From Octopus sinensis (lineage: Eukaryota): a DNA stretch of 64,000 nucleotides. The stretch covers positions 69,440,001 through 69,504,000 of the forward strand of contig NC_043000.1 of the NCBI RefSeq assembly GCF_006345805.1, given 5' to 3'. The stretch's first letter is position 1. The number at the start of each line of letters is the position of its first letter. The translations under genes were made by a program, and so were the position numbers. Positions 3,801-46,607 of the stretch are shown in pieces. The notes under the pieces are model-generated. The model made no database searches, was not told the origin of the DNA, and saw only the letters and a program-made list of their open reading frames with translations.

Positions 3801-4210
3801 CGCCGACATGCCCGCGATGTGAGCAGGATAGGGAGACCGTCTTGCACGCATTCGTGGAGTGTCCGGAGTTATCGGGACTGATAGCTTTTGTTGAACAACT
3901 GTTGTCAGTGATGAGAAGAGTACAGCTATCAGCTGAGTCTATCATCGAGATTGTGCCGCCCCCTTTCCTTAACAGGGAAAGAAAGGCTTGTTTTTTCTGT
4001 GTAGTAGCCATACTGAAAGAAACAGTATGGAAGACGCGTACGAAAGGTATAGTGACAGGCACCTTTGTCTCCGGCCAGGGGTTGATTAACTTTTTTAGTT
4101 ACCACCTCAGTAGCAAAATCAGGCTGGAGAAGAGGTGTCTGTCACGAGATATGTTTGTGAAAAGATGGAAGTCTGTGGCATACAAGATGGGTATGTTTGA
4201 CACCAGGTAA
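829..4210 (+). pseudogene. LINE ORF2 (APE endonuclease-RT-zinc finger), broken into at least three frames
   Basis: APE motifs LNVRGL, ETK, GDFN, SYLDRI and TDH (829-1755). RT motifs PGLDG, DQFKAFDRV, RQGCPLS and AYADD (1935-3044). Finger CPRCEQDRETVLHAFVEC (3023-4210). Confidence 0.9.
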
Positions 4211-4437: not shown

Positions 4438-4815
4438 AAGTAGCTTGCTAACCAACCACATGGTTCTGGGTTCAGTCCCACTGTGTGGCACCTTGGGCAA
4501 GTGTCTTCTGCTATAGCCCCGGGCCGACCAATGCCTTGTGAGTGGATTTGGTAGACGGAAACTAAAAAGAAGCCTGTCGTATATATGTATATATATATAT
4601 GTATGTGTGTGTGTGTTTGTGTGTCTGTGTTTGTCCTCCTAGCATTGCTTGACAACCGATGCTGGTGTGTCCCCGTCACTTAGCGGTTCGGCAAAAGAGA
4701 CCGATAGAATAAGTACTGAGCTTACAAAGAATAAGTCCCGGGGTCGATTTGCTCGACTAAAGGTGGTGCTCCAGCATGGCCGCAGTCAAATGACTGAAAC
4801 AAGTAAAAGAGTAAA
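4438..4815 (+). mobile_element. tRNA-derived SINE family 1, starting inside the head
   Basis: Matches the full copy at 60544-60950 from AAGTAGCTTGC onward, with internal (TA)/(TG) tract and tail ending GACTGAAACAAGTAAAAGAG. Confidence 0.85.
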
Positions 4816-9114: not shown

Positions 9115-9160
<46 letters not shown>

Positions 9161-9213
9161 ATTGGTGAATTGAAGAAATGGAGCTGAACGCAGATTGAAC
9201 AGAAATCGTTTTA

Positions 9214-9304
9214 TTTCATTCTACACACTGTTTCGAAAGGCACAAATTACCAAAATCCGATTGAATAATGGGACCATATTGTGTCTTTCTCTTCAGGAAG
9301 AAAA
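9214..9304 (-). ncRNA. Type I hammerhead ribozyme copy in the PLE 3' end, with altered stem III loop
   Basis: Reverse complement reads CTGAAGA-stem II-GAAAC-AGTGT-GTA-GAATGAAA. The palindromic ACGT of the other copy is replaced by AGTGT. Confidence 0.6.
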
Positions 9305-9904
9305 AGGAAATCCGTTGGAAAAACAAAAACAGAACAGAGGCGGAGCAAAAAACAAATCGAACTGTGCTCCTAAGAGCCCATGGCGAAACTGTTTATCAGT
9401 GTATGTTGAGAACCGGTGGCTGAAGAATTCAACGGGTCAGGCATCGGTCAATCATGTGGTGAGGGTGTATAGATGTTCTTTGTGACCGAGAATAAAGTTC
9501 TGACTATTTAAGGAATATTGGATGTTTTGTAAGGGGCGAGAAAAAATCTACTTAGAGACGTGTGTGTGTGTATACTGTTCTATATATGTGTGTGTTGGCG
9601 TAGGGGTAGAAAACATTTTTTGTGTACGTGTGTGCGTTTGATCGTTCGGCTGTCAGTGGCTACTGCCGTGATAACCGTTGGGTGGCAGAAAGAAAAAAAT
9701 AAAAAATATATATATATGTTATGTTTTATGTGTGTGTGTGTTCATCTAAGCCTGCCTTGTCAAGGAAACCCCCCGCTGTGAGAAAACCAAGCCCCGTTTG
9801 TCTTACAGGAGTAATTCCCCTTGCAGTGGTTAATCGTAGATATCTTAAAGGCTATTTCAGAATTTGTTACCAAGGGCTATGGGTGCCGGTATTATTTATA
9901 AACG

Positions 9905-12469
9905 CTATTTAAAGGCCAGATAAGTGTAACGCCGCCAATGGGGGCATCGAAAAGCCGACTGTAAGAGCCCGTTTACCATCCGGCCTCTGGCAAACAAAAT
10001 ATGGAAGAGTTCGGAGACACAAAGGTTGCACTGTCTTCTGCCCCTATCAAATGGGAGGGCCACCGACAAAATTGACCATTCCAGCCTATAGCTTAAGTTC
10101 GCATCCTTCAGTCGCCATATTAGCTTACTGAGTCCCGTGGTCTGGCGCTTGTTCACGTCCCGAAAAGTTGCGTAATGGTTGGAGACACGCAAAGACAATC
10201 TTGAGGATGATGCCCCTACATAAGTGAAGGCATCTGAGTCCGTGTAAACCTTGCATTGGTAGACGGCGTTTTTGATCTTGGAGTTCGCCGACGTGAATCT
10301 TAATCTGCTAGGATTAGTTTCTGAAATTAGAACTGCGTTCCTGTCACTATATTCGTTCCGAGACCTGCCCGCTTACTACTCTATTTTCCACTACGTCACT
10401 ATTAACTATAGGAATAACCCCTGATTCTCCACTATCTATCAGAGTGCTGTCATTGCTACTGCCCGTGGTACTGCTATTGCGGGAAATGATGCTGGGGATG
10501 CTAATGGGGCTCTCTACCCTACTCCCATTATTACCGTCAACCACAACACCCCTATTTATAACTATACCCCTAGTGGGTACTCCCTGGCTGGAGCTGAGAT
10601 TATGTGTCACTGTACTGGCTCTCATATCATTATTACTACTATAATTATTCCTACTGAGCATTAACCGGAGCGGAAGAGGCTGTGCCTCCGGAAAAAGGTG
10701 ATAGGGTCTTAGTAAGTAGCCTATTATTATGGGAGGCGATTATCTGGGCGAGGTTTTTAGTGTTGGAGAAAGCTATCCTAACTTTATGTGAGTTAACCGT
10801 GGAGTAATATTTGGAATTTCTGGGGAGTTATTGGCGATGGCTTGTCTAAACATGAGGGGGAGGTTAGTTCTAATCTGCTTACCAAAGGGGATTACAAACC
10901 ATATATGCTTATTCCTATCAGTATGATGGGTCGGGACGCCAGCTCTCGCATTCGGGTGGGTGATTCTCGGATGAATAACGGGTCTTGGGTTAGTGTAAGA
11001 CCTCTCGGACCGATAATTATCCTTGTTCGCTAAATTAAATGCGGGAGCGACTACCCCGGCATCCGCCGCGCTCCCGTCCTTACTTAAAATGTTAATGTTA
11101 TTATATACGGCCCTATCCTGATGACCGAATGATGGCATCGGAAGGGCCGGATCAATATAAATTACCTTCTGCCTATAACCGGCCTTGGATAGTGCGGCGT
11201 TATAAAATTCCGCTTTCTGCATAAAAATATCGGCACTGGCGGACAAGCCAGACAATCTTAGAGAGATGTTTTTAACCAAATTGTCTGTTACGGTTTTGGC
11301 ATGATTTGAGAAGACACTGACATACTTCAAATTAGTGGAAGGCTTATGGTAAGGGCAGTATGAGTCGCTATTAAGGTTAAGTGTAACGTCTAGGAAATTA
11401 GCCTTGGTGAGTTCATTATCAAAAACTATACTCATGCCCATTCTATTAAAAAACCTAGCTAACCTGCTCTTAGTTTTCTGCACTATTCTGTTCGTGGTGT
11501 TTTGCAGGTAAAACAGACAATCGTCACGATACAGGCCGCCCGCGATCTCCGGGAATTGGTCGGACAATTCGTAGAGAATATATATTCCGACCAAATCGGC
11601 TATCTGCGCACTATCCGAACTACCCATAGGCACATCAAATTCATTGGAGTATCTTTACGGATCCACAACTTATTATCAAACTTAATAAACGATTTCCTGG
11701 CAACTAAAATGATATCTATCTCTTCTCTGGTGAGGCCAGCCTTGTTGTGAGCATGCCAGAGGGCCTTATTTAGCACACTAGGGTTAATCGAGGGGTAGAA
11801 GCTGGCGATATCAAACTGAATGAACCTAGTACGGTTCTTATTGGGGATGGAAGAGAACCACTTCACTACCTGCGAGGAGTTGGCCCAGAGGCTGAGCTTC
11901 AGCTTGTTTACTAAACTAGGGATATATTTATCTAAAATGTACTTACTGATTATCCCGATATCAGATCTAGCAGGGCATATGAGTCTTAGCGCTGGGTTGG
12001 TGTGGAAGTTAGGTTTATGGTCCTTCACTATAAATCTGGGTTGCTTGGGGCTAAGCGGCTGAGTTCTCATTTGAATTCGGTGTTTAAATATTATATCCTT
12101 AATTTCCAAGTTTACCTTCCTCAGGGTACTCCAATTGGTTTTTCTATATATTTTTCTTGATCTCTTTACCGAGTAAATCTAGGTACTGCTTAATGGACAT
12201 CTTGTATGTGTTCCTGGTCTTGTCGGACTGGACCAGGACTCCGTCCGTTCTATTAATGTCCTTGGTAATTTTATCTAGGTATCTGAGGTGGGCATTTCTC
12301 CTGGGTGACTTCCTGAACTTAATCTTTCTAACTATGTCCCACAAGTCGTCCTCAAACTTCTTCAGTCTTGGGTTCGGTGGCGGCGTATCCAATGTTTTAA
12401 AAAGCCGGCCGTATTCGGACGATGCTGTTGTCCGGTTCGATTTTAGATCTTCGTTCTCGTGAAAGAAAA
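9905..12469 (-). pseudogene. PLE polyprotein (RT + GIY-YIG) with several single-base frameshifts
   Basis: Motifs FKT..TPP...FEDDL, QSDKTRNTY, FDIASFYPSI, PMGSSDSAQIADLVG, YRDD, FLDVTLNL, SNH, (F)PRNSKYYSTVNSHKVRIAFSNTKNL, AVY...TYVG...RVSNH and CNLC...CPH. No stops are seen apart from those caused by the shifts. Confidence 0.9.
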
Positions 12470-13182
12470 TGTGTCTCCGAACTCTTCCATATTTTGTTTG
12501 CCAGAGGCCGGATGGTAAACGGGCTCTTACAGTCGGCTTTTCGATGCCCCCATTGGCGGCGTTACACTTATCTGGCCTTTAAATAGCGTTTATAAATAAT
12601 ACCGGCACCCATAGCCCTTGGTAACAAATTCTGAAATAGCCTTTAAGATATCTACGATTAACCACTGCAAGGGGAATTACTCCTGTAGACAAACGGGGCT
12701 TGGTTTTCTCACAGCGGGGGGTTTCCTTGACAAGGCAGGCTTAGATGAACACACCACACATAAAACATAACATATATATATATTTTTTATTTTTTTCTTT
12801 CTGCCACCCAACGGTTATCACGGCAGTAGCCACTGACAGCCGAACGATCAAACGCACACACGTACACAAAAAATGTTTTTCTACCCCTACGCCAACACAC
12901 ACATATATAGAACAGTATACACAACACCACGTCTCTAAGTAGATTTTTCTCGCCCCTTACAAAACATCCAATATTCCTTAAATAGTCAGAACTTTATTCT
13001 CGGTCGCAAAGAACATCTATACACCCTCACCCACATGATTGACCGATGCCTGACCCGTTGAATTCTTCAGCCACCGTTTCTCACATACACTGATAAACAG
13101 TTCGCCATGGGCTCTTAGGAGCACAGTTCGATTTGTTTTTGCTCCGCCTCTGTTCTGTTTTTGTTTTTCCAACGGATTTCCT

Positions 13183-13273
13183 TTTTTCTTCCTGAAGAGA
13201 AAGACACAATATGGTCCCATTATTCAATCGGATTTTGGTAATTTGTGCCTTTCGAAACACGTGTAGAATGAAA
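13183..13273 (+). ncRNA. Type I hammerhead ribozyme in the inverted pseudo-LTR
   Basis: Core CTGAAGA at 13192-13198. Stem II is GAAAG.CACAA/TTGTG.CTTTC. GAAA at 13254-13257, then C-ACGT-G-T-A, giving GUA cleavage after 13265. Stem I is TTTC-TTC/GAA-(T)-GAAA. Confidence 0.8.
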
Positions 13274-13483
13274 TAAAACGATTTCTGTTCAATCTGCGTT
13301 CAGCTCCATTTCTTCAATTCACCAATAATGTTTTAACTTCAATTATTCGCACCAACGCACGGTTGCAACGCCAGATGGTTGTACCTCCAACCGTGGTGTT
13401 TACTGCTGTGATTTTTGCTACTAAGGTATCGGTTAAACTTTTGATTAATCTACTACAAGATTATTCATCTTTCTATTTCACAT

Positions 13484-13518
<35 letters not shown>

Positions 13519-13634
13519 TATGTTTTCCATACTTAAAGCTGAAAAAGTCTCAATGACTGAAACCGGTACTGAAATGTTTTTTATAACATTATTTTAGCAT
13601 TTTCTATCTTGACTTTTTTTCTCATAATAATATA

Positions 13635-13674
<40 letters not shown>

Positions 13675-13692
13675 TATATATATTCTATATCG

Positions 13693-13754
<62 letters not shown>

Positions 13755-14289
13755 TGTAAATATATTTATTTGTACATATATATTGTACATACATATGTAT
13801 GTTTGCGTGCCTGTATTTATAAGCATATGTGCGTATAGTTAGAAAGATAGATAAACCCACACACACTCATATATACACACATACATGAATACATATTTAT
13901 ATATGTACATATGTATGTACATATGTATGTGTGTGTATATTTGTGTGGGTGTGTGCATGTGTGTGTGTGGGTGAGCGTGTATGTATGTACTGTGTACATG
14001 CATATGCGTACATAAGTATATGTGGATGTACACACACACGATCGAATTTCGATTTTCTGACTGGCAACGCCTTGTTTTTGAGTAAAACACTTCATTTCAC
14101 TTTGCTTTAGCCTACTCAGCTTTAAATGGGTAAAATCTCCAATAGATTTGCCTTCTGTTCAGTGGAAATGTTGGCCAGATCGCCTACATAACAGGGTGGC
14201 AGCATTCGAAAGTTACAATACGAGGAAGCGCATCATGTCAAACGGTGGTTTATAAGCACATCCGATAGTCTGGTTGATACAGTGATATA

Positions 14290-14560
14290 GGCGTGGTTGT
14301 GTGGTAAGAAGGTTGCTTTCCAACCATATTGTTTCGAGTTCAGTCTCACTTCGTAGCACCTTACGTAAGTGTCTTCTACTATAGACGATTAACAACCGAT
14401 GCTGGTGTGTTTATGTCTCCGTAAACTAGCAGTTCGGCAAAAGAGACCGATAGAATAAGTACTAGACTTAAAAAATAAGTTCTTGTATCAATTTGCTCGA
14501 CTAAAACATTTGAAGGCGGTGCTCCCATACGGCCGCATGAAAGTGAAAGAATAAAAAAAA
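14290..14560 (+). mobile_element. SINE family 1, internally deleted
   Basis: Head and tail match 60544-60950; the middle TA/TG part is missing. Confidence 0.75.
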
Positions 14561-15190
14561 GAGAATATATATATATATGAATATATATATATACTAGCTT
14601 AAGGTGACCCGCTCTACGCGCGGGTAAGAGTGTGGTATACATAAATAAATGTATACAAATTATATATATATATATATATAAATACAGATATATACACTTT
14701 GTTTATATACATTATATATACATATTTATATATAGAACACACACATACACACACATTTAAATTAACCCAATAAATATCTGATTCATGATATTTGTTCTCA
14801 TGATTGTGTGGTGGTGGTGGTGGCGATGATAATTCTCTCTATGAATGCAGACAGATGTAGAGAGAGAGTGTGAAATCACTGTCGAAGGCGGCGGGGGAAG
14901 ATATAGGACGCTGTGAAACGACGTTATCGAGAGAATTTGAAGGGAAGGGAGGAAAGAGAGAGAAACGGAGGAAGACAGATACATAAAAGTATGAGAGGAG
15001 ACAAGTGTGCGTTTTTTGCCCTAGCAACGACACCTTTCAAGATAGGGATTTCTAAACTAGCCCACTCTCATCCTCACCTCATTTTACATGTCCCTGTAAA
15101 TCCGACGGGATCTAGTGGCCTTTAGCCCGTTCTCAATGCCAAAACCAGACAAACAAACAAACTTTTCGCATTTCAGAATTATAATATAGA

Positions 15191-16069
15191 CTAGCTTAAG
15201 GTGACCCGCTCTACGCGCGGGTAAGAGTGTGGTTCTTACTTTCTGTTTTTTATCACCACATTCTCCCTCTTTGTTTTTCTCTCCTTTCTCTCTCACTTTC
15301 CCACTCTCTTACAATTCCTTTCTGTCGGACTCTCCCTCGCTTTCTCTTACTCTCTATCTTTCTCTATCTCTATCCCATTTATTAACAACAAAAGATCTTG
15401 AGTAAGTTGAGAAAGTAAAATATTTTGAAAGATCAATCATAAATATCAGGCAGTGACAACGGAAAGGTCTGCTTCAAGGCGGACAGCAAAACACTAACAT
15501 TTAAAAGGGACAGACGAACTTGCGAGCTGAATAGAAATAATATATATATTGGAAACCAAAGTTTGAAGGGATAGAATCTGAGGATAGTAGAGTCACCATG
15601 GCTGGCATTTCTTAACGTCGGACAGCAACGTAGTGGCAGTTTAACGACTGGCGTAAAATTTTGAAGTTGTTGCAAAAGAAAATTCGTAAACACCAAGTTT
15701 TGAAGTGATTCTTTCTCACGACAGTAGACTCACCATGGCAAGCATTCAAAACTTCTTCATCATGGACGACAACACATTAACGATTTAAAGGCTAGCGCAA
15801 ATCTTTTAGCTTGATGTAACAGAGAATTCCTAAACACCCGCTCCTGTAAATTTTAATCACCTTCCAGCCCCATTTAGACCCCTTTTCACATTTTGGTTAA
15901 TATAACCCGATTTCATTCGGGTCTACTCGGGCCACATTTTATAAGATGAGGAATTTTGTCCTAGAGGTCACGCCTTTCATTTGAGGAAAAAATAGTTGTC
16001 ATGCAAACTTGCCAGCAATTTTAACATAGGTGTGCATATTTTCAGCACAACCGACCACATAATGCACAC

Positions 16070-16075
<6 letters not shown>
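15191..16075 (+). mobile_element. Possible Helentron/DINE-1-like non-autonomous element
   Basis: Start ACTAGCTTAAGGTGACCCGCTCTACGCGCGGGTAAGAGTGTGG is repeated at about 14593-14636. It has a CT-rich tract, an internal diverged repeat of about 140 bp, and ends in ...CACACATTATATAT. Classification rests on recalled terminal motifs only. Confidence 0.4.
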
Positions 16076-16119
<44 letters not shown>

Positions 16120-16535
16120 GTGTGTGTGTGTGTGTGTGTGTACGTGTACGCATTATATATACAAATGTATATATATATAAAATTATATATATATATAAAT
16201 TAAATTAGAGATAAAACCACTATTAGGCAAATTAAACAGTGAAAACATAACCTAAAACATTAAAATAAAAATATAATGTACAAAATATATAAAATATAAA
16301 ATTTAAAAATATATATATATATATATATATATAAGGATAAAATTGTTAATCTAAATATCGATCTCATCAAGTGGCCAGCATGGGAATAAAAAAAACCTTC
16401 AAAGCTAATGATTATTATTAAAATTATAATTTAGGATATCTAAGATATATCATCACGCTGGAAATAGCAGCTAAAACTTGACTGTATATATTAAACAGAA
16501 TGTGATAACAAAGCATACATACATACATACATACA

Positions 16536-16572
<37 letters not shown>

Positions 16573-16608
16573 ACATATATATACATACATATATATACAT
16601 ATATGTAT

Positions 16609-16642
<34 letters not shown>

Positions 16643-16769
16643 TGAGAGGCATTGGTATCTAGAAGAGTCAATGAGTAAGTGCTATAGACAGACCGTAGTT
16701 AAACTCTTGGTTCGATAGTGATACGACTGAGGAGTTTAATGTGGGTCTCGTATTAGCATGCATATATAT

Positions 16770-16875
<106 letters not shown>

Positions 16876-16879
16876 TAGA

Positions 16880-17355
16880 GAAAATGAAAGCCAACGCTAT
16901 GAAGAGTTTTCAAGATATTTAAAAGGAAAAAGATAAAGATATATTCTAAAAGTGGTGGACGGTCTATTCTATGGTATACACCCCACTTCTCCTAAACGTT
17001 AAGAACTTAGCTAAATCCTTCTTTGATATTCTGGACTCCAATTTCCCTCGTCAACATAACTATTACTCTATCTTTAATAGATCTATCCTGAAGCTATCCT
17101 ATTCCACTCCATCCAAATTTCGAATTTATTATGGCAGCCTCTAATAAACAAAAGCTTTCTCTCTACTATCAAAACTTACACAATAACAACTCCGTTATAC
17201 ACGAGTGCCTAACATGTACGCAGCTCCAGCATTGAACACCATACGTTAGACTACAACCATAACCCAATCTACTGGCACTATCCAGAATACTAACACAACT
17301 TCCATCACCGTTAGAGATAGATTAATTAACAACTACGATAGCAATAATAACGATG

Positions 17356-17411
<56 letters not shown>

Positions 17412-17514
17412 CCTTATCAGACGGGTAGTCATGATGGGTATATTGGGCTTCGTATATTTTACCCCAGTGTCACTTTGATGGCATGAACTGCTCTCTCACT
17501 CAATAATAATAATA

Positions 17515-17562
<48 letters not shown>

Positions 17563-19430
17563 TAATAATAATAACGTAGATCTTTCTACCCTCATCTGTA
17601 ACCTCCCCTCTGACAGTATCACCGCCTCCATTCCTGGAAAGAATCCCCAAATTTCACTCACTTGTAACTGCCGACCTGGGTCCATCTGCCCTCTATAAAC
17701 CTATTGTAGATCTAATATAATTTATAAATGCACCGTCCTCAACACCTTACACAATTCTACAGCTATAGACATAGGGTCAACCATAAATTTTAAGCAGCGA
17801 TAAGCCGAGCTCATCGCAATTCTTTTAGATACAAGAAACACAGTAAATCCACAACACTCGCCAGTCACATACATCATCTCAAAAATAGAAATATTCCCTA
17901 CACTTTGTCGTGGTCAATAATAGATTCAGGGCTTCCATACCAAGGTCAAGTTATGCCTAAAAGAAGTATTCCACAACTACACGACACTACTAAATAAATA
18001 TAAAGAGGCCTAAAGTACATGCAACCAACGATTTTTTGATACCTTCAAATTTTACCACAAATCTAAATGCAACCTAAATAACCACACAACATATATCCAC
18101 AACACCCCTAGGTAAATCCCAACAACCCTACTTAACTTTCCTTTATCTTCATTTTAATTTTTAACCTTTAATTTTTAGATCACCTATCTTACTTTAAGGA
18201 TCTCACTTATTAAATATTACATATATGGACATACAAGCGGATACATGTGTGTGTGTAAATGTGTGTGCATGTATTTTTATGTATACACATATATACATAC
18301 ATATATATGTGTGTGTATGTATGCGTACGTGCTTATATATATACAAATATATATGAGTGAGAGTGTGTATGTGTATATATGTCTACGTAAGTACCTGTAT
18401 GCGCGCTTGTGTGTGACTGTGTGTAAGCGCGTGTGCGCATGCGCGTATGTATGTGCGTATGCATGTATGTGTGTGTATCTATGTATGCATATTCGCACAT
18501 GTATATGTGCGTGTGCGCTCGTACTTATGTACCTTCTTTCCTCCTCTCTGATTCCTACCTATCACATACGTCTATTTGTAGAAATTTGACATCTTTGTAT
18601 TCTTCCCTCCACTTTAAATTTTACTACTAAAACTAATACTCACTTTGGTATCACCCCACCCGTATCTTTTCTCTACTCATCCTTTAATGCAACCATATCA
18701 TATCACCCCTACTCACATATCTCACACTTATTTACTCCTTAACATCTCATCTCTTCCTATCCCTCCCCTACTCCTCTCCCATCCTCCCCTCACATTATCT
18801 TGACCACCAATTAACACTCCTTTTCTCACTTCTTTCGCCCTTTCTTCACTTTCACTCTTTTCACTGTTTTTGTCTCTTTTTCTCTTTCATCTTATTTTAT
18901 TTACACTTTTTCTTTTTGTCTCTTTCTTCCTCTCATTTTCTCTTCCTGTTCTCATTTTGACCAATCTCCTCATTCTAATCATACACATCTCTCCCTCCTC
19001 CATCTATCCACAAATACTACCAAGACATTCTCAAATTTTCATTCACACCACAAAACACTTTCGAATGAGCATCACAGAATCCACGGCTCCATACTTTGAA
19101 ATGACTAAACATTAACTACTATTGGAACTTACATACCATGTAAAGGAAACTTTTTTTTACCACTTCTATACACAACTTTACTCGAATAATAGAACTGCAA
19201 CAACAATTATTTATATTTTATTTCTACTTTAGCTCTCGTATTTCCTTCTATATTTTCTATCTCCCCCTTTTCTATTATAATTCCTTACTTCGAACTCAAA
19301 TATTTACCTCTATTTAACCATCTCACATCGTCTCTCATGAAGTGATATCCATAATATACCAGAAACAGCTGTAAGACTATATCTATATGTTTTTCCTTAT
19401 AAATGTACTGTAAACTCCTCATAGCCTTCG
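16880..19430 (+). mobile_element. Degenerate PLE (Naiad-like, second family), interrupted by (AAT)n and TG/TA tracts
   Basis: WYTPHFS...FFDILDSNFPRQHNYYSIFNRSILKLSYS (about 16970-17110) and NIIYKCTV...IGSTINFKQR...PYTLSWSIIDS (about 17710-17940). A hammerhead relic lies at 19330-19377. Confidence 0.7.
19330..19377 (+). ncRNA. Degenerate minimal hammerhead (core mutated, probably inactive)
   Basis: GTCT-CTCATGA-...-GAAAC-AGCT-GTA-AGAC. Stem I is GTCT/AGAC and the loop AGCT is palindromic, but CTGATGA is changed to CTCATGA. Confidence 0.55.
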
Positions 19431-19452
19431 CTTTGTTACCTCATTTTGTTAA

Positions 19453-19483
<31 letters not shown>

Positions 19484-19628
19484 TGTATATATGTATGTAT
19501 GTATGTATGTATGAATGTATGTATGTATGCATATATTATATATATATAATATATATATATATATATTATATATATATATATATAATATTATTAGAGACAA
19601 AACCACTATTTTGTCTCTAATATTATAT

Positions 19629-19658
<30 letters not shown>

Positions 19659-19661
<3 letters not shown>

Positions 19662-19880
19662 AATAAACTGACCATTGACAGAAATTTGAAAGGCACCCAA
19701 AGTCTTGCTAATAATGTCTACAACTTTAGCTTCAGGAAATTCTTTCTGGATGTCTTTACGGAGTGAATTCATCTCTTTCCATCCACCTCAGGCATCACAG
19801 TATTCAATGACCACATAATATTCTTCAGGGTTTTTGATTTCCACATCAGTTTTTTGGGCAAAATCGTCATTTGTTGACAT
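19659..19880 (-). pseudogene. Rdx/SelW-family selenoprotein-like reading frame (CxxU), intronless and 3'-truncated
   Basis: MSTNDDFAQKTDVEIKNPEEYYVVIEYCDA[TGA]GGWKEMNSLRKDIQKEFPEAKVVDIISKTLGAFQISVNGQFIH followed by (TA)n. The TGA at 19790-19788 is in frame. The pattern V.Y-C-x-x-U...L...FP...GAF.I.VNGQ.IH fits the SELENOW/MIEN1 family. Confidence 0.75.
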
Positions 19881-20245
19881 TTTTGCGAAAGAATGAAGCA
19901 AATAACACATCGGCTGTCTTAAGCAAAAACTGTAACGTTATAGTGAAGATATTTATCCAGCACATATTGCTACCCTTACATGTTATCCATCTCAATATGT
20001 GTCCAGTCAACAACAACAACACACTTCATTGTTTACCTTGTTTATTGATGAGATGTCTTGTGATGTTTAAATTGCAGTGTATGTTGTAAGAGGCATCTAA
20101 ATGTACAGGTTAATGTTGGGCAGCCCGTTGTGGTAGTAGTGATGTGTGTATGTGTGTGTGTGTGTTAGAGTGTGTGTGAGTGTGTGTATATATATATTTG
20201 TATATATATATATGTATGTGTGTGTGTGTGTGTGTGTGGTGTGTG

Positions 20246-20556
20246 TGGAGCGCAATAGCCCAGTGGTTAGAGCAGCGAACTCGCGGTCGTAGGATCGCGG
20301 TTTCGATTCCCAGACCAGGCGTTGTGAGTGTTTATTGAGCGGAAACATCTAAAACTCCACGAGGCTCTGACAGGGGGTGGTGGCGGTCCCTGCTGTACTC
20401 TTTAGCCACAACTTTCTTTCACTCTTTCTTCTGTAGGCCTGCTCGCTTAGCCAGTGGGGTGGCGTCATTTGAAGGCTAAAACAATGCGAAGCGAAGTGTG
20501 ACCAGCGATGTGTAGCAACCTCTGATAGCCTGGTCAGTCACGTGATCACGTGATAT
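20246..20556 (+). mobile_element. tRNA-derived SINE family 3
   Basis: A-box-like TAGCCCAGTGG, B-box-like GTTTCGATTCC, a GC-richer body and a tail ending in CACGTGAT repeats. Confidence 0.7.
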
Positions 20557-20699
20557 ATGTATGTATGTATGTATGTATGTATATGTATAATTTAGGACAA
20601 TCAGTAAATTTCATAGTAATACTCGGAGTTTAGGTTTCCTGTATTTCCGACATGATCTTTTAGGCAGCCCGAGCATCTGATCACATAAATTAGATTTTC

Positions 20700-21220
20700 G
20701 GACGCACAAGTGAATACCAGGAGACCTAAAATTACGACCCATCATAGCTGGCCTATCCTGTGAAACTCACCGATTACGTTCCTTCATGGACATTCTCCTG
20801 AAGCCATACCTAAAACACATCAACAGTTACATCAGAGATGATTTGGACATGTTAAACCACTTCCCAGAACAGGTCGAGGAAAAAACATTCATGGTTACAT
20901 TCCATGTCATGAACTTATATTCCAACATACCACATAGTTATGGGATAGAAGCAATTCGATTCTGGCTGGAACAACATCCAGAAGTAATACCAGAACGAAT
21001 AAACAAAGAATTCATCATTGAATCCATGAAATTTATCCTCCATAATATTCACTTCCTATTTGATACTACCTTCTACCGCCAAAAATCTAGAATTGCGATA
21101 GGTACGAAAGCAGCACCTACCATTGCCAATCTTACAATGGGTTTCTTAGAAAAAACAATGTATCAGGAATCACTGCTAAAATTTGGAGACCCTCTCGCCC
21201 AATACATAAAGGAAAATTGG
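20700..21220 (+). mobile_element. PLE RT fragment (different family from 9152-13473)
   Basis: LRPIIAG...MDILLKPYLKHINSYIRDDLD...NLYSNIP...IAIGTKAAPTIANLTMGFLE. It stops at YIKENW, just before the expected YxDD. Confidence 0.8.
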
Positions 21221-22463
21221 CCTTACGAATCTCCAACCATTACGCAACTTTTCGAGACGTGAATAAATGCCAGACCACGGGACTTAGCAAGCTAATATGG
21301 CGATTGAAGAATACGAACTCAAGCTACAGGCTGGAATGGTCAATTTTGTCGGTGGCCCTCCATTTGATAGGGGCAGAAGGAAGTGCACCTTTGTGTCTCC
21401 GAGCTCTTCCATATATTGTTCGCCAGAGACCGGATGGTAACGGACTTTTACAGTCGGCTTTCGATGCCCCATTGGCGGCGTTATATACTTATCTTGCTTA
21501 TAAATAACGCTTATAAATAATACCTGCCACCCGGTTACACTACTTATATGAAAATAGCCCTTGGAAATAAATTTTGAAAAGCTTTAAGAGAAATATGATT
21601 AACCATTGCAAGGGAATTACTCCCAGGAGACGAATGGTTTTTGTTTTGACGACGGGAGGTTTCTTTGACAAGGCATGATTAGACGAGCACACGCACACAT
21701 AAAATATTTTTCTGCCGCCTGACGGATTTTTCAGCAGTGACCATTGTGTAGGGCTGTTTACCAACTGACGGCCGCGCGATTAAACGCACATACGAACACT
21801 AAAATATTTTCTACCCCCTGACGGATTTCTCAGCAGTGACCAGTGTGTAGCGCTTCTTACCAACTTGCGGCCGCGCACATATAGACAGTACACACACACA
21901 TGTTTCTAAGTAGATTTTGGCTCGCCCCATATAATACACCTAATATTCTTTAAATGGTCAAACTTTAGTCTCGGTCACAAAGAACATCTACGCACCCCGT
22001 GCTCTCACCCCCGGAATGACCGCTGCCTGACCTTTAAATCTTCAAAGCACCCACCCCCGCAACGATTTCAACATACATTGATAAACAGTTTGGCCATGGC
22101 TCTTAGGAGCCTCGTTCGATTTGTTTTGCTCGCCTCTGTTCTGTTTTTGTTTTTTTCCAACGGATTTCCTATTTTTCCGAGAGAAAGACACAATATGGTC
22201 TCCTTATTCAATCGGATTTGGTAAATTGTGGCTTTCGAAACACGTGTAGAATGCAATAAAACGATTTCTGTTCAATCTTCGTCAACTCCATTTCTTCAAT
22301 TCACTAATAATATTAAAATTCAATTATCCGCACCAACGCATGGTTGCACAACCCATATGGTTGTACCTCCAACCGTGCTGTCTTCTGCTGTGATTCTTGC
22401 TACCAAGGTATCGGTTAACTTTTGATTAATCTGCAACAAGATTATTCATCTTTCTATTTCACA
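21221..22463 (+). mobile_element. 5'-truncated, older copy of the 9152-13473 PLE family (GIY-YIG tail + 3' end)
   Basis: Colinear with 12470-13473 and with the minus strand of 9905-10190. The hammerhead core is degraded (about 22165-22250). It ends ...CTTTCTATTTCACA followed by (TA)n. Confidence 0.85.
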
Positions 22464-22497
<34 letters not shown>

Positions 22498-22599
22498 ATA
22501 TATATATATATAATATATATATATAATATTATATATAATATTATATGTACATATATGTACTTTGTCACTTTTTCTTATGCGGACACGGGTTGAAAAGTT

Positions 22600-23760: not shown

Positions 23761-25459
23761 TTTCAGGTGCGTATCTTTACGTCCTGCATTCAAATCTAGA
23801 TTTGCTCGACTTCGTTTTACCCCCTACCGATATCGATAAAATCAGTACTAGAACCCTGATTTTGTGCGAATGTAAGAAATCGTTATTGACATTAAAACTT
23901 ATTATTATCATTAATTTTTGTATCATTATTAAGGAGAGGAGATGGTAGAGCATGTCGGAAGTCGGCTTTGCCTTTCATCCTTCCGGGGTCGATAAAATAA
24001 GTGCTCGTTGAACATAGGGGCAGATGTCATCAACTTAAAACTTACTGGCATTGTGCCAAAATTTGAAATTATAATTATTATAAAGGCATCATTATTATGT
24101 ACATATATGAAACAAATTGCTTATATAAGGCTTCACTCAGAACTGCTTAAATAGACAACTAATTTGTTATTACTATTCACCCTTTTATGTTCAAGAAATG
24201 TAAACCTGCAAAGTGGTATGAACCTTTTCAAAATATACATTATAAAAGTATAATAGAGTTAAAAGTTGAAAATTCTTTAACAAAGAAAGCAATTCAAAAC
24301 CTTACATAGTAAAAAATATACATGGCGTGATACTGAGCACCAAACTCGTATTTTCACTGTAAGTTATAGACCTCATATTTATAGTACCGGTTATCAAAGG
24401 CTCGGAAATTTTCATTTTCATTTTAAATTTAATTTGAGGTACAAGTTGGAAATGACAATATAGTGTTGGATGGACTTTTCAAGAAAAGTAGTGACCGTTT
24501 CTGAACATTCAGCGTTTGATGTTTTAAATTATGCTTTCTTCTGTAACTTTACAAGTGGAATAATACTCAAGTCAACAGTATAAAGAGTAGAAGTTAATTA
24601 AGTTCGTGCATTTCATTGATTTTAGACAATATATCTGGTTGTTATCTTTAATATTTTTTTCAGAGTTTAGATATGGACTTGGAAGTCGAATACGTTCAAT
24701 TTTCATTAATATAAAATAAAAACGAATACACAGATCATTTTATAATCAATTTCATTTATTAAAACGTATAAAAATACATTGTTGCAACGACATGCTCATT
24801 ATTCGTATAAAACTTCCGTTCCATAAAGGAAATTACGTAAAAATTCTCAATATATTGATATAAATAAAATGTTGCCAGCAACTGATTGTGCTTATTAGGA
24901 GATCGTCGATGAAAACTTTTCTTTACAAAATTATATTTATTATATATATATTAAATGTTTTGTCATATGAAATGTAAAATAAATATGAAGTATGTTTTTG
25001 ATGGACATATAATAAAGAACCAACGTGTAGTAAATGCCTCCAACGCAAACAGTAAATATTTTATAATTGAAGTTGAACACATTTCGAAATATTGAAGCGA
25101 AACATGTGTGCAAAGAAAAGTTAAATAACATGGTATTTAGTCATCGATGTATGCACGGATGTATTTGAGTTTATAGTTATGTATGTGTATGTATTAAATC
25201 ATATAAAAATAATTTAATACCAAACAATGCAGCGTGTTAGTTTTTAATTTAGTGTCCAAATCTGCATTTTGAAAATCAGCAATGACTGATTATCACTCCA
25301 GAAACAGCGTTATTCGGTAGAATTTGCTACAGACTGAACCAGCAGTCATTTGTAGCTACTGTACATTTTAATTAAACAGGTGTGTGACTGTACACGATAA
25401 TGTATGTGTATGTGACTGTATAATGTAAACAGTGTTTATATTAGACTACTGCATCTATG

Positions 25460-26022
25460 TTAATATGTGTTCCGGTAACCTTTACACATAGCTCTGAGCT
25501 TGAACGGTGTGTTGTGAGCGGTATATAACAATTGATTGTAAGTTGGGAAATTATAAATGTATCTGTTGTAAGGTTGGCTGCTGATTGAATGCAGTAATTG
25601 AGGTTGTGGCCAAATATTACGACCTACATTCACTAAGAATACTTTACTGCCTTCATTCTTAAGCTTTTCACTTTCTTCTAATACTTCTTGTGTAATCGCA
25701 GTTACTGAAGGATCGACAAACAAAACAGCTGTGTTCTTTTTCCAAGTAGTCGTACTGTCTTTTGTTTCATTTCCTTTTCTCATTTCACGTATGACATTCG
25801 CCAAGCCGGGAACAGCTATATTAACACTGTTTCTTGTTTCTGAATAAGATTTCCCAGTCAGTGAAGTCGTAGGAACATTGAAGTTAACCGGACAGTGGGC
25901 AAACGACACAACTCTGAAATTTCCATATCCAGTGTACGGCAGCATAGTATTGATAAATTGTGTAATCATGTTGGCTCTGTAGGCTCCCATAGAGAGTAGG
26001 TCATACCCATAGGTTACAGATG
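25460..26022 (-). CDS. vWA gene A exon 5 (degenerate vWA-like domain, stop codon)
   Basis: Acceptor TTTCAG at 26024-26023, phase 1, 563 nt, the same length as gene B exon 5. TAA at 25462-25460. Confidence 0.9.
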
Positions 26023-26624
26023 CTGAAATAGAATATAAAGCATATTTATCATTGTGGGGATGTAAAAACTGAAAAGAATTTGTAATTGATATTCAAATAA
26101 TATTGTAATCTGACAATTTATACACATCAGTAGAGTCTTTGTACTTAAATGCTGTGTTTCATTTTCATTGACAAATTTCACCAAATTTGTAAAATCTCTA
26201 TTCATATATCAAATATCACCATTTGAATCCTGCATAATCTAGTACATCAACAAAATCACTTTTGGTGATTTCTTGGCACTGACGTCAATATAAAGTATTA
26301 TCGGTTTAAAATTTTCATCTCTATGGGAGCCCACAGAGCCAACATGATTAGTGCTAAAACTTTAACTTGATCTCTCTTTAAAATTTCTACATTTTTGAAG
26401 TTTATCGCACAAGAAATTTCCTATTAATTCTGAACAGTATACTTTGGTATGCTCTTTAGACAGGAAGACATGCTTTAAATATACCAAGGCTACTTGTTTC
26501 AAAGAGTATTCGCTACTATTCAGTTCTTTAGATTTTAACATTTGGAGTTTATACTATAATATATTTAAAAGATAATATTCATAAAATACTGGAATAATAA
26601 AAATATGTGAAGTAATATGCTTAC

Positions 26625-26945
26625 AAGATTCATCTCTTTGTGGTATATCAGAAAACAGAGTTCTTGGTTTCCCTGTTGCTGGAAAAACAAAGGTTTTTAT
26701 TGATATTGATTTGGCTGGCGATGCAGTTACAACCGAAGTAGTCATTTCTGGTGTTGCTGCTGTTGTTGTTGCTGTTGTTGTTGTTGTTGCTGCTGCTGTT
26801 GTTGTTGTTGTTGCTGTTGTTGTTGCTCTAGTAGTAGTGAAAGGCTGTTTTGTTGTAGTGGTTGTCTTCATTTCCGTAGTAGTTGTAAACTGCTGTTTCG
26901 TTGTGTGGGCTGATGTATCTTGAACAACAGGAGGTTTTGTTATAG
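26625..26945 (-). CDS. vWA gene A exon 4 (Thr-rich mucin-like linker)
   Basis: Acceptor CACAG and donor T|GTAAGC, 321 nt, phase 1-1. Reads AITKPPVVQ...TTTATTTTT...PQRDES. Confidence 0.9.
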
Positions 26946-27808
26946 CTGTGTGGGAAAAAGAAAAACCTAAATTAACACATGACATTACGTATACACTTCA
27001 AAAATATAGCGTTTGTACATTTTCTCTAAAAGCAGTATTTCACACCATGATAATATATTGGAACGCGATAACTAAGTGGTCATCCGATCTGCCAGAAATA
27101 TCATCCAAATCTCTCTCACCTCATACCCTAAAGTCTTAAAATTGAAGGGTACATTGTATGATCTACTCCGACATATAGAACTATTGTAAAAAATCAAAAT
27201 AGAGTAGCTGTTTTGAACGCCTTTGATCAACAATCGATTAAGCTGGGGCTAAAAAAAATAAACTACATGCTGGAATTTTGAAGTTTTACAGTAGCATTCG
27301 GCCGTTTTTGTTTTATCATTTTTTTCATATACCAATTAAAATTAAAAACATTTTAGTTGAAAGTACAATATATTTACATTAATGACTCTAAAATCTCGAA
27401 GGACTACATTTCTTTATATTTAGTGTTTACGGTCTACACTACAAGACCGACGTAGATAGACAACTATAAAATAAATTATCCACATGACACCCGCCATTAG
27501 CAAGGTAATCAAAGACAGAGACAGAAATAGTTCGTCCATATAAAAATAACCAGACAGCATGACTACATCTTGCAAGTATTCGGCCAAAGCAGAAAGCAGA
27601 GTATCAAACTGAAAAGGGTGATTCATATGGTAGTGGCGTATATAAAGAAAGTTTTACGTCACATACAAAAGTCGAGTTGCTATATAAGGTATCACTTGCA
27701 CAATTTCCTTTCATTGCGAACATGTACAACAACAGCATGCTAGGTAAATTATTGAAAACAATACTAATAATATTTGGAACCTACAGTCTTTAAGCTAAAT
27801 CAATTTAC

Positions 27809-28372
27809 CTTCACATGTTTTCACTCCGAAAGATTTCGCTATATTCTGTAATGCTGAATAACTGGTTACTTCAAACACATTGTTGACGGGATCACTCGCA
27901 ATAGCTTTCAATTCTTCCAAATCGTAATTACTTCCAACACCAATAGCATAAACGTGGATTCCAAGTTTATGAAGTAACTTGGCCTCTTCTTTTGTGGCTT
28001 TCGTATCACGTGATTTACCATCAGTGATAACAATTGCAATGAAAGGAGATGAAGATGACTGTAGCTTCGGTTTCAGTTCTGATCTCAAAACTCGCAATGC
28101 TTCCGCTGTGTTAGTTTGACCAGTTCTGTAAGGAATGTTATCTATGGCTTTTCTCACTTGTTGGCTGTCTGCATATCGATCAAGAGAAAACTCGAGATGA
28201 GCTCTATCACTGAAAGTAATAGCGCCAACGTTAACTTGAGAATTACCAGTACCAATGTCAAAATTATCCACCAGATTTTGAGCAAATTTCAGTTGTTTTT
28301 TATAATCGACAATCCATATACTACTAGAAGAATCTAGTACAAACATGATGTTCGCTGCTTTACCGACACATT
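27809..28372 (-). CDS. vWA gene A exon 3 (vWA domain with intact MIDAS)
   Basis: Acceptor TTGCAG and donor G|GTAAAT, 564 nt. Motifs VLDSSSS (DxSxS), TNTAEAL, ITDG and YAIGVG. Confidence 0.95.
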
Positions 28373-43730: not shown

Positions 43731-44018
43731 GTGAGTATTCAATTTTGATATGATTTCCCATAACATTGCACTTCACTGCATATTTATCATTTTTCCCGAT
43801 TGAAATGCATTATGCATTTACAACAACTTAAGATTATTGTATATTTTTATGTATGTATGTATGTATGTATGTATGTATGTATGTATGTATGTATGTATGT
43901 ATGTAGGTAGGTAGGTAGGTATGTATGTACGTATACGTGTATGTGTATTTGTTGTTAGTCTATATTATATTATGCGCATAGTATAATTTATTGAAGTCAA
44001 AGTTATTTTGCTTTGCAG

Positions 44019-44582: not shown

Positions 44583-45017
44583 GTGAGAAACTATCAAGAC
44601 TCATCTAATATTTTTCAATTTGTTTTTCTCAAACAATCGTAATATTGACTTGTAAATACGTAGTGCATATTCTTTTAAAATTACCCTTTTACAAAAATAC
44701 GCCCGTAAGCATTTTGTTATCAGAAATCTTCATTGTGTGGTGTTATGCTTGTTTCTCTTTTTAATTTTCCAATTAATAAATTTATGCAATGTCGATAAAT
44801 TATAAAGGAATAATTAACATGTGTATTTTTATTTACCAGCAAGTCGACAACTGTTTCGTATTTGCTTAACTTTCCCATCCTTGTAATCGATAGGTTGTCT
44901 AATACGTATTGCGGTATTATAAAATATTAAGGTTATGATCTGTTGTAATTTGTTTACGCAGTTATCTGTAAGTATTGATAATCAACTCACAAACGAATTT
45001 GTTTTATTGCATTGCAG

Positions 45018-46541: not shown

Positions 46542-46607
<66 letters not shown>

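What the first reader, a model, noticed from the sequence alone, without database searches (positions are those of the whole stretch)
19659..19880. Hidden selenoprotein-like frame (CxxU, Rdx/SelW family), intronless and cut off at (TA)n
Seen: a 74-codon minus-strand frame with a single TGA exactly at the second position of a YCDA* redox motif, followed by conserved-looking family sequence to VNGQFIH, then (TA)n. The ORF track splits and misses it. Known: SELENOW/T/H/V and MIEN1 share a CxxU/CxxC thioredoxin-like fold, and UGA recoding needs a 3'-UTR SECIS. Inference: this is either a retrocopy that lost its 3' end and SECIS, or a real exon using G|GTCAGT at 19672. A copy truncated at its 3' end and joined to (TA)n, with no poly(A), resembles the neighbouring PLE junctions rather than L1-type retrocopies, which hints at PLE trans-mobilisation of a host mRNA. 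I found no downstream exon or SECIS in the window.
Basis: partly seen in the sequence, partly recalled or inferred. Interest (0 to 1): 0.75.

Follow-up and report, generated by a model that had tools for sequence, protein, structure and literature searches.

The report
Dead retrocopy of octopus selenoprotein gene
The hidden frame is real, but it is a dead, intron-less, partly inverted copy of an octopus selenoprotein gene (Rdx family, MIEN1/SelW-like) made by reverse transcription; it is an ordinary pseudogene whose odd architecture records how it was made.

Summary
Window 19880-19659 (-) is a 74-codon frame with one TGA at the second position of a CxxU motif. It passes Pfam's Rdx threshold, covering only profile positions 2-54 of 74.

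The nearest relative is an Octopus vulgaris gene with at least four coding exons and introns of 7.6, 1.5 and 1.2 kb. That gene has the same TGA, a SECIS about 2.1 kb past the stop, and AATAAA just after it.

The window reproduces the exact spliced exon joins, so it is a processed retrocopy. It is not an exon using GTCAGT at 19672.

New here: the (TA)n end is not a truncated 3' end. Parental 3'UTR sequence plus an embedded tRNA-like SINE lies at 19937-20551 on the opposite strand. It abuts the copy's 5'UTR with 3 nt of microhomology. This is a twin-priming-type 5' inversion. The true 3' end lies in the SINE's microsatellite tail, upstream of the parental SECIS.

About 317 nt of mRNA are missing (last 34 codons, stop, 212 nt of UTR). 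There is no SECIS or poly(A), and dN/dS is about 1.

Which reverse transcriptase made it (SINE-partner LINE or Penelope-like element) is unresolved. Interest is low to moderate.

The parts
19659..19939 (-). Inverted 5' arm of the retrocopy: 5'UTR (19939-19881), ATG 19880-19878, and codons 1-74. It consists of parental exon A (19939-19798), exon B (19797-19697) and the first 38 nt of exon C (19696-19659), joined exactly as in spliced mRNA.
   Evidence: blastn and tblastn to L001 give 90.2%, 93.3% and 92.9% identity for the three exons. Parental GT..AG boundaries and a base-by-base alignment are.
19788..19799 (-). CxxU redox motif (Cys28-Asp-Ala-Sec31). The TGA is at 19790-19788. The Cys codon spans the former exon A|B junction (TG|T).
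   Evidence: Translation, the alignment to the MIEN1 CxxC, and the same TGA in O. vulgaris exon B.
19937..19939 (.). Inversion junction. The bases GTT are shared by rc(mRNA 5' end) and the parental 3'UTR position L001 13077, giving 3 nt of microhomology.
   Evidence: Direct reading. The blast alignments overlap at 19937-19939.
19937..20139 (+). Direct 3' arm, part 1: a parental 3'UTR segment equal to L001 13077-13285, which begins 213 nt after the parental stop codon.
   Evidence: 89.5% identity. It is single-copy in the window and in all fetched loci.
20140..20245 (+). (TG)n/(TA)n microsatellite between the UTR segment and the SINE. It is also present at this place in the parent.
   Evidence: TRF; sequences.
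20246..20551 (+). Direct 3' arm, part 2: a tRNA-like SINE carried in the parental 3'UTR (equal to L001 13378-13690). Its 3' end is the end of homology with the parent.
   Evidence: 89.5% identity. Further copies of the SINE head and body occur in O. sinensis and O. bimaculoides loci, most of them flanked by TA/TG-type microsatellites.
20552..20590 (+). (TA)/(TATG)n: SINE tail and/or target-site microsatellite, at the 3' boundary of the insertion.
   Evidence: TRF gives 20556-20582. The parent has (TA)n(TG)n at the same place.
19453..19658 (.). (TATG)n then (TA)n microsatellite, with a 51-bp palindrome at 19582-19632. This is the 5' boundary, the target side from which the inverted arm would have been primed.

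Best explanation
This is a processed pseudogene of an octopus Rdx-family selenoprotein gene (MIEN1/SelW2-like, CxxU) that was non-functional from the moment it inserted. It has a twin-priming-type 5' inversion.

Shown:
- The spliced mRNA was reverse-transcribed, because both intron positions are cleanly absent.
- The insertion consists of two arms from the same transcript in opposite orientation. The 5'UTR plus codons 1-74 lie on the minus strand (19939-19659). A 3'UTR segment plus an embedded SINE lie on the plus strand (19937-20551). The arms are joined head to head with 3 nt of microhomology.
- About 317 nt of mRNA between the arms are absent: the last 34 codons, the stop codon and 212 nt of UTR.
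- The parental SECIS and poly(A) signal lie about 1.3 kb beyond the SINE and are absent from the copy.

Inferred:
- First-strand synthesis began at the microsatellite tail of the SINE inside the long 3'UTR, not at the poly(A). The insertion site was a (TA)n/(TATG)n microsatellite.
- The other nicked strand, ending in (TA)n, primed a second cDNA internally after the His74 codon. That cDNA ran to the mRNA 5' end.
- The two cDNA ends were then ligated.

Without a promoter, a SECIS or the C-terminal third of the domain, the UGA can only terminate translation after 30 residues. The copy has since drifted neutrally.
For: Family:
- The frame scores 37.4 bits on Pfam Rdx.
- The reconstructed parent covers the whole Rdx profile (positions 2-74 of 74) at 52.1 bits.
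- The best solved structure is MIEN1 at E = 5e-10; SelW scores E = 0.03.

Parent gene in O. vulgaris (OX597831.1):
- Exons lie at L001 ..2363, 9976-10076, 11544-11620 and 12799-. Introns are 7612, 1467 and 1178 nt, all GT..AG.
- It has the same TGA.
- A SECIS lies at L001 14952-15015. Rfam SECIS_1 scores 29.6 bits, E = 2.7e-4, as the top hit with a full-length match.
- An independent pattern scan found the same site, with a 10-bp perfect helix 2, an AAA loop and a 16-bp helix 1. MFE is -30 kcal/mol and z = -5.85.
- AATAAA lies at L001 15053.

Retrocopy:
- The window is collinear with the spliced exons A|B|C.
- L001 13077-13711 matches window 19937-20576 on the opposite strand relative to the CDS.
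- Divergence is uniform: CDS 8.1%, UTR 10.5%, SINE 10.5%.
- There are 15 non-synonymous and 3 synonymous changes over 179 and 43 sites, so dN/dS is about 1.2.

SINE:
- Independent copies in three other octopus loci end at a similar length in TA/TG-type microsatellites.

Precedent:
- 5' inversions occur in 13% (3/23) of human polymorphic processed pseudogenes.
- Only 46% of inverted L1 insertions have the two cDNAs within 20 bp of each other (PMC12016303).
Against: - The parent was examined in O. vulgaris. The window's species is unknown (searches did not identify it), so the exact breakpoints and the gap length are inferred from an orthologue or a parent about 90% identical.
- Target-site duplications cannot be read because both boundaries are microsatellite.
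- There is no microhomology between (TA)n and the O. vulgaris mRNA at the internal priming point (CAC|TCTCGA).
- A 317-nt gap is larger than the classical few-bp gaps of twin priming.
- Twin priming has been documented for L1. It has not, to my knowledge, been documented for microsatellite-tailed elements.
- dN/dS rests on only 18 substitutions.
- The SECIS score is below Rfam's gathering score (29.6 against 35).
Confidence: 0.8

Rival explanations
1. The same retrocopy, but made by a Penelope-like element (PLE) reverse transcriptase and GIY-YIG endonuclease acting in trans on the host mRNA. This rival shares the retrocopy core of my best explanation and differs only in which enzyme did it.
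For: - The insertion sits in (TA)n/(TATG)n.
- It has no poly(A).
- It has an inverted plus direct architecture.
- Naiad-type PLEs prefer (TA)n, often carry an adjacent inverted 5'-truncated copy, and have been reported to retrotranspose host genes in trans (PMC8557442).
- An RT fragment whose relatives carry FYGLPKIHK...RPIIAG motifs lies about 165 nt from the insertion's 3' boundary, at 20717-21220.
Against: - In PLE insertions the inverted arm is a 5'-truncated copy that shares the element's 3' end with the direct arm. Here the arms are non-overlapping parts of one mRNA.
- The reported PLE-mobilised host genes kept their introns; here the introns are gone.
- The 3' end coincides with the 3' tail of a tRNA-like SINE, which points to that SINE's partner enzyme.
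- The neighbouring RT piece is a decayed internal fragment with stop codons. It is cut at both ends, and 125 nt of unrelated DNA lie between it and the microsatellite.
- No hammerhead ribozyme or other PLE hallmark reached Rfam's threshold anywhere in the window.
Confidence: 0.2
2. A conventional, collinear retrocopy inserted first. A later inversion plus deletion, for example microsatellite-mediated, then produced the present arrangement.
For: The region is crowded with microsatellites and inverted repeats. Examples are (CATA)n at 16514-16604 against (TATG)n at 19453-19547, and 16887-16947 against 19374-19434. These could promote rearrangement.
Against: - It needs at least two extra events.
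- One breakpoint would have to fall exactly at the 5' end of the cDNA, and the other would have to remove 317 nt.
- The inner junction lies in unique sequence with 3-nt microhomology, as expected for cDNA end-joining.
- Both arms are equally diverged from the parent.
Confidence: 0.1
3. A live exon of a functional selenoprotein gene, spliced from G|GTCAGT at 19672 to an exon and SECIS outside the searched region.
For: The frame is open from ATG to (TA)n apart from the TGA. A GTCAGT is present at 19672.
Against: - The frame is continuous across two parental introns.
- Conserved coding sequence (QFIH) continues past the supposed donor, and the same GTCAGT is internal to parental exon C.
- No C-terminal exon exists anywhere in the window.
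- No SECIS lies within 7.7 kb downstream.
- The 'upstream' sequence is inverted 3'UTR, not a promoter.
- dN/dS is about 1.
Confidence: 0.02

Closest known systems
Rdx family (Pfam PF10262): SELENOW, SelW2/Rdx12 = MIEN1, SELENOT, SELENOH, SELENOV
   Same: It has a CxxU motif at the start of a thioredoxin-like domain. Its best solved relative is MIEN1 (2ljk), and the U aligns with the second Cys of the MIEN1 CxxC. The parental C-terminus HSRIESGCNPIHEQILYILRDA parallels [22 protein letters not shown] of MIEN1.
   Different: The window copy holds only profile positions 2-54 of 74. The parent lacks the C-terminal CaaX box (CVIL) of MIEN1 and of most distant relatives found. It uses Sec where MIEN1 uses Cys.
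L1-type processed pseudogenes with a 5' inversion (twin priming; Ostertag & Kazazian 2001, cited in PMC12016303)
   Same: It is an intron-less cDNA copy. The upstream part of the mRNA is inverted and joined to the downstream part in direct orientation. Microhomology marks the inner junction, and the sequence between the arms is lost.
   Different: There is no poly(A) tail. The 3' end lies in the microsatellite tail of a SINE embedded in the 3'UTR. The target is a (TA)n/(TATG)n microsatellite rather than TTTT/A. The gap is 317 nt. The host is a cephalopod, where the responsible element is unknown.
Mobilisation of RNAs through a LINE/SINE 3' tail recognised by a 'stringent' LINE RT (eel UnaL2-type model; from my own knowledge, not tested here)
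   Same: The copy ends exactly at the 3' end and microsatellite tail of a tRNA-like SINE rather than at the mRNA's poly(A). Other members of the SINE family also end in TA/TG-type repeats.
   Different: The partner LINE was not identified. The 3' module of this SINE copy (positions 187-307) was found only in the window and in the parent.
Penelope-like element insertions (Naiad and similar clades; PMC8557442)
   Same: They share a (TA)n insertion bias, inverted plus direct structures, the absence of poly(A), and the ability to move host genes in trans.
   Different: The arms do not share a 3' end. The introns are removed. No pLTR, hammerhead or 'tail' extension is recognisable.

Membership tests
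Rdx family (PF10262) | Match to the family HMM above Pfam's gathering score | tested here: met
   37.4 bits (U written as C) and 30.3 bits (X), against a cut-off of 22.6. The parent scores 52.1 bits.
Rdx family (PF10262) | CxxC/CxxU redox motif at the aligned position | tested here: met
   YCDAU aligns with YCEPC of MIEN1. The O. vulgaris parent has the same TGA.
Rdx family (PF10262) | Complete domain (profile positions 1-74) | tested here: not met
   The window copy stops at profile position 54 of 74. The parent covers positions 2-74.
Rdx family (PF10262) | Thioredoxin-like fold | not tested
   No structure prediction was run. A truncated pseudogene would not be informative.
Functional eukaryotic selenoprotein gene | In-frame UGA aligned with Sec/Cys of homologues | tested here: met
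Functional eukaryotic selenoprotein gene | SECIS element in the 3'UTR of the same transcript | tested here: not met
   The window has no SECIS. The parent has one at L001 14952-15015 (SECIS_1 29.6 bits, below the gathering score of 35).
Functional eukaryotic selenoprotein gene | Transcription and Sec insertion | not testable with these tools
   This needs RNA-seq, 75Se labelling or mass spectrometry.
Processed pseudogene (retrocopy) | Parental introns absent, with exact exon-exon joins | tested here: met
   The A|B join (GAATACTG|TGATGCC) and the B|C join (ACTTTKG|GTGCCTTT) are reproduced.
Processed pseudogene (retrocopy) | Intron-containing parent gene in the same genome | tested here: inconclusive
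   A parent was found in O. vulgaris. The window's species could not be identified.
Processed pseudogene (retrocopy) | 3' poly(A) tail | tested here: not met
   The direct arm ends in (TA)/(TATG)n after the SINE.
Processed pseudogene (retrocopy) | Target-site duplication | tested here: inconclusive
   Both boundaries are TA/TATG microsatellite.
Twin-priming 5' inversion | Two arms of one RNA in opposite orientation, with the inverted arm taken from the more 5' part | tested here: met
Twin-priming 5' inversion | Inner junction joins the 5'-most ends of both arms, with microhomology | tested here: met
   GTT is shared at 19937-19939.
Twin-priming 5' inversion | Small gap or overlap between the arms on the RNA | tested here: inconclusive
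   The gap is 317 nt. In humans, 54% of inverted L1 insertions have distances above 20 bp.
PLE-mediated insertion | Inverted arm is a 5'-truncated copy sharing the 3' end of the direct arm | tested here: not met
   The arms do not overlap. The defining criterion comes from PMC8557442.
PLE-mediated insertion | Insertion into a (TA)n-type microsatellite | tested here: met
PLE-mediated insertion | pLTR or hammerhead ribozyme, or a 30-40 bp 'tail' extension | tested here: not met
   No hammerhead at Rfam's gathering score in the window. A tail extension is not recognisable.

The most novel reading that the evidence does not exclude
The copy is a natural record of an octopus retroelement enzyme that normally moves a tRNA-like SINE. 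The enzyme could be a microsatellite-tailed LINE or a (TA)n-targeting PLE.

On this reading the enzyme started reverse transcription at a SINE tail embedded in a host 3'UTR, carried the upstream spliced mRNA with it, and performed twin priming. If that is general, embedded SINEs would be the main gateway for processed-pseudogene formation in cephalopods. Such copies would systematically lose whatever lies 3' of the SINE, here the SECIS. Twin priming would also not be restricted to L1.
Probability: 0.35. Interest if true: 0.5.

Novelty: new member of a known kind. Interest (0 to 1): 0.3.

Why it matters
For genome annotation:
- This frame should be flagged as a pseudogene, not as a selenoprotein gene.
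- The real gene is mis-annotated in O. vulgaris, where the model starts at the Met after the UGA. The true product is a 108-residue Sec protein whose SECIS lies 2.1 kb downstream of the stop.

For transposon biology:
- The locus is one clean example of a retrocopy that is not poly(A)-primed.
- It ends at the tail of a SINE embedded in the 3'UTR, landed in a TA-type microsatellite, and shows a twin-priming-like inversion.
- This gives a concrete, testable hypothesis about how retrocopies arise in cephalopod genomes.
- It is a single case, and the class (processed pseudogene with 5' inversion) is well known.

Tried and rejected
- **Downstream exon:** tblastn with the O. vulgaris C-terminus against the whole window gave only chance hits.
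- **SECIS in the window:** I ran Rfam at gathering score on the whole window and at permissive E-values on 12000-20700, plus a custom pattern scan. Rfam returned only microsatellite-driven miRNA false positives. The pattern scan returned only weak candidates.
- **SECIS in the first 1.2 kb of the parental 3'UTR:** none. It lies further out.
- **tRNA call for the SINE head:** ARAGORN and Rfam do not call it. A/B-box-like motifs are visible by eye only.
- **Species identification:** a VWA-exon homology search gave at best 68% identity. Exact-product look-ups of three window ORFs found nothing.
- **Was the retrocopy inserted into the neighbouring RT element?** No. N-terminal parts of related RT proteins do not map to the left flank. 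DNA 20591-20716 matches nothing else.
- **Naming the RT fragment:** Pfam gave no hit and PDB gave nothing useful. Relatives are unnamed RT-domain proteins of Octopus and Mytilus. 'PLE-like' therefore rests on motifs I recall, not on a test.
- **Segmental DNA duplication:** rejected because the introns are absent.

Full report
**The observation**

The minus strand of window 19880-19659 reads MSTNDDFAQKTDVEIKNPEEYYVVIEYCDA*GGWKEMNSLRKDIQKEFPEAKVVDIISKTLGAFQISVNGQFIH. It then runs directly into (TA)n.

- With the TGA written as Cys, the frame scores 37.4 bits on Pfam Rdx (PF10262; cut-off 22.6; E = 3e-9). With X it scores 30.3 bits.
- The match covers profile positions 2-54 of 74, so the last quarter of the domain is missing.
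- The best solved relative is MIEN1 (C17orf37, 2ljk). The TGA aligns with the second Cys of the MIEN1 CxxC.

**The parent gene**

A homology search returned one close protein, a 72-residue 'SelT/SelW/SelH family' model from Octopus vulgaris. It is 87% identical and begins at the Met just after the TGA, which is a typical selenoprotein mis-annotation. Its locus is L001 (OX597831.1). Mapping it shows at least four coding exons:

| Exon | L001 coordinates | Content |
|---|---|---|
| A | ..2363 (ATG at 2281) | MSTKEES...VVIEY + TG |
| B | 9976-10076 | T GAT GCC TGA GGT...; same in-frame TGA |
| C | 11544-11620 | GAFEVSVNGQFIHSRIESGCNPIHEQ |
| D | 12799- (stop at 12862-12864) | QILYILRDAKAGKPIPTISKKE |

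- The introns are 7612, 1467 and 1178 nt, all GT..AG.
- The reconstructed 108-residue product covers the whole Rdx profile at 52.1 bits.
- It resembles MIEN1 (E = 5e-10) more than SelW (E = 0.03).
- Distant relatives found by an exhaustive HMMER search are MIEN1-like proteins, most of them with a C-terminal CaaX box. The octopus protein lacks that box.

**The parental SECIS**

My pattern scan of 3.6 kb downstream of the stop gave a single strong candidate at L001 14960-14998.

- It has AUGA, a perfect 10-bp helix 2, a 12-nt apical loop starting UAAA, a GA on the 3' side and a 16-bp helix 1.
- It folds at -30 kcal/mol, z = -5.85.
- It is the top Rfam hit of that stretch: SECIS_1, full-length, 29.6 bits, E = 2.7e-4. 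This is below the gathering score of 35.
- AATAAA follows at 15053.

The parent is therefore very probably a genuine selenoprotein gene with a 3'UTR of about 2.2 kb.

**The window copy is a processed retrocopy**

- Window 19939-19798, 19797-19697 and 19696-19659 (minus strand) are collinear with exon A (including 59 nt of 5'UTR), exon B and the first 38 nt of exon C. Identities are 90-93%.
- The exact spliced joins are reproduced.
- The supposed donor G|GTCAGT at 19672 is simply the coding sequence ...AAT GGT CAG TTT ATT CAC inside exon C. It is followed in the parent by TCT CGA ATT GAG (SRIE).
- No sequence resembling the remaining 34 codons exists anywhere in the window.
- No SECIS exists in 12000-20700.

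L001 13077-13711 begins 213 nt after the parental stop. It matches window 19937-20576 on the plus strand, which is inverted relative to the coding part and directly abuts its 5'UTR. The match has three pieces:

- a unique 3'UTR segment at 19937-20139 (89.5% identity);
- a (TG/TA)n microsatellite;
- a roughly 306-bp element with a tRNA-like head at 20246-20551 (89.5% identity).

At the junction the window reads CTGTAACGTT|ATAGTGAAGA. The left half is the reverse complement of the start of exon A. The right half is the 3'UTR (parent ...CTGTCTTGTT|ATAATGAAGA). GTT is common to both, giving 3 nt of microhomology.

Homology with the parent ends where the element ends (…GTCACGTGATCACGTGAT), at a TA-type microsatellite in both loci.

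**The element is a SINE**

- Its head and body (positions 1-186) recur in three unrelated loci fetched from O. sinensis and O. bimaculoides, at 69-80% identity.
- Those copies have different 3' modules but similar total length.
- Most are flanked by TA/TG-type microsatellites.

The direct arm therefore ends at the SINE's own 3' tail, about 1.3 kb short of the SECIS and poly(A) site.

**Mechanism**

On the plus strand the structure is:

(TATG)n(TA)n | rc[mRNA 5' end ... His74] | [3'UTR position 213 ... SINE tail] | (TATG)n

This is the architecture produced by twin priming. One cDNA is primed at the 3' tail. A second cDNA is primed by the other nicked strand at an internal site and runs to the RNA's 5' end. 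The two growing ends are joined by microhomology, and the RNA between the two priming and stopping points is lost.

- Here the lost piece is 39 nt of exon C plus 278 nt of exon D, 317 nt in all.
- In human long-read data, 13% (3/23) of polymorphic processed pseudogenes carry such inversions.
- Only 46% of inverted L1 insertions have the arms within 20 bp of each other (PMC12016303). A gap of this size is therefore not disqualifying.

The steps that are shown are the spliced template, the two arms, the junction, the missing segment, and the absence of SECIS and poly(A). The steps that are inferred are priming at the SINE tail, the microsatellite target, and internal priming by the (TA)n strand.

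**Pseudogene status**

- Against the O. vulgaris CDS there are 18 substitutions in 222 nt: 15 non-synonymous and 3 synonymous. With N = 179 and S = 43 sites, dN/dS is about 1.2.
- Divergence is similar in the CDS (8%), the UTR and the SINE (10.5%), which fits neutral drift. The numbers are small.
- The sequence 'upstream' of the ATG is inverted 3'UTR, not the parental promoter.
- With no SECIS, the UGA terminates translation after 30 residues.

**Which reverse transcriptase?**

This is unresolved. Naiad-type PLEs prefer (TA)n, make inverted plus direct structures, and can move host genes in trans (PMC8557442). An RT fragment whose Octopus and Mytilus relatives carry FYGLPKIHK...RPIIAG motifs lies at 20717-21220.

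Against the PLE idea:
- PLE inverted copies share the element's 3' end with the direct copy. Here the arms are complementary parts of one RNA.
- The reported PLE-mobilised host genes kept their introns.
- The RT fragment is a decayed internal piece with stop codons. It is separated from the microsatellite by 125 nt of unrelated DNA.
- No hammerhead ribozyme is detected in the window.
- The 3' end coincides with a SINE tail, which points to whatever enzyme moves that SINE.

My estimates, as shares of the retrocopy reading only: a SINE-partner, microsatellite-tailed non-LTR element about 0.5; a PLE about 0.2; the remainder unknown or a later rearrangement.

**Verdict**

This is a well-spotted but ordinary object: a truncated, 5'-inverted processed pseudogene of a MIEN1/SelW2-like selenoprotein gene. 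Its modest interest lies in two points.
- It exposes a mis-annotated Sec gene with a distant SECIS in Octopus.
- It is a clean single example of a retrocopy that is not poly(A)-primed, ends at a SINE tail and targets a microsatellite, with a twin-priming signature in a cephalopod.

Noticed in passing
L001 2281-12864 and 14952-15060 (O. vulgaris OX597831.1): The public gene model (72 aa) starts at the Met after the UGA. The real CDS is 108 codons with Sec31. The SECIS lies about 2.1 kb after the stop, followed by AATAAA, and a SINE sits in the 3'UTR.
   Followed up: yes
window 20246-20551; L002 16918-17100; L003 6590-6739; L004 16566-16730: This is a tRNA-like SINE family with a shared head and body (about 186 nt) but at least three different 3' modules. 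Most copies are flanked by TA/TG-type microsatellites.
   Followed up: partly
window 19582-19632: A roughly 51-bp near-perfect palindrome (…TTAGAGACAAAA CCACTA TTTTGTCTCTAA…) is embedded in the (TA)n next to the retrocopy. It is single-copy in the window and in all fetched loci.
   Followed up: partly
window 16514-16947 and 19374-19547: An inverted pair consists of (CATA)n plus a 61-nt unique segment (16887-16947) against its mirror (19374-19434, 82% identity) plus (TATG)n. It is either a TIR-bounded element or an inverted duplication bracketing about 2.4 kb just left of the retrocopy.
   Followed up: partly
window 9155-10202 (-), 12470-13521 (+), 21213-22507 (+): A 1.1-1.3 kb repeat occurs in three copies at 76% identity. 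Two copies are inverted around RT-like ORFs at 10773-12109 (-), which carry FDIASFYPSI and YRDD motifs. The third abuts the RT fragment at 20717-21262.
   Followed up: no
window 20717-21220 (+) and 58040-58345 (-): These are decayed fragments of an RT whose Octopus and Mytilus relatives carry FYGLPKIHK...RPIIAG motifs. They look PLE-like by motif, but no library named them.
   Followed up: partly
window 25457-28346 (-) and 43991-47372 (+): VWA-domain exons (Pfam VWA, 128 bits) are present in an inverted duplicate at about 89% DNA identity. The best protein relatives are cephalopod VWFA proteins at no more than 68% identity.
   Followed up: no
window 829-4210 (+); 51175-55106 (+): There is a LINE with APE endonuclease, RT and zf-RVT ORFs, and an LTR retrotransposon pol (RT, RNase H, integrase) that is open for 1063 codons.
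   Followed up: no
window 4441-4815, 60569-60952, 61287-61506; L001 7887-8115, 11795-12178: A second, abundant SINE-like repeat (88-93% identity between copies) has an internal (TA/TG)n microsatellite. One copy sits in intron 3 of the parental gene.
   Followed up: no
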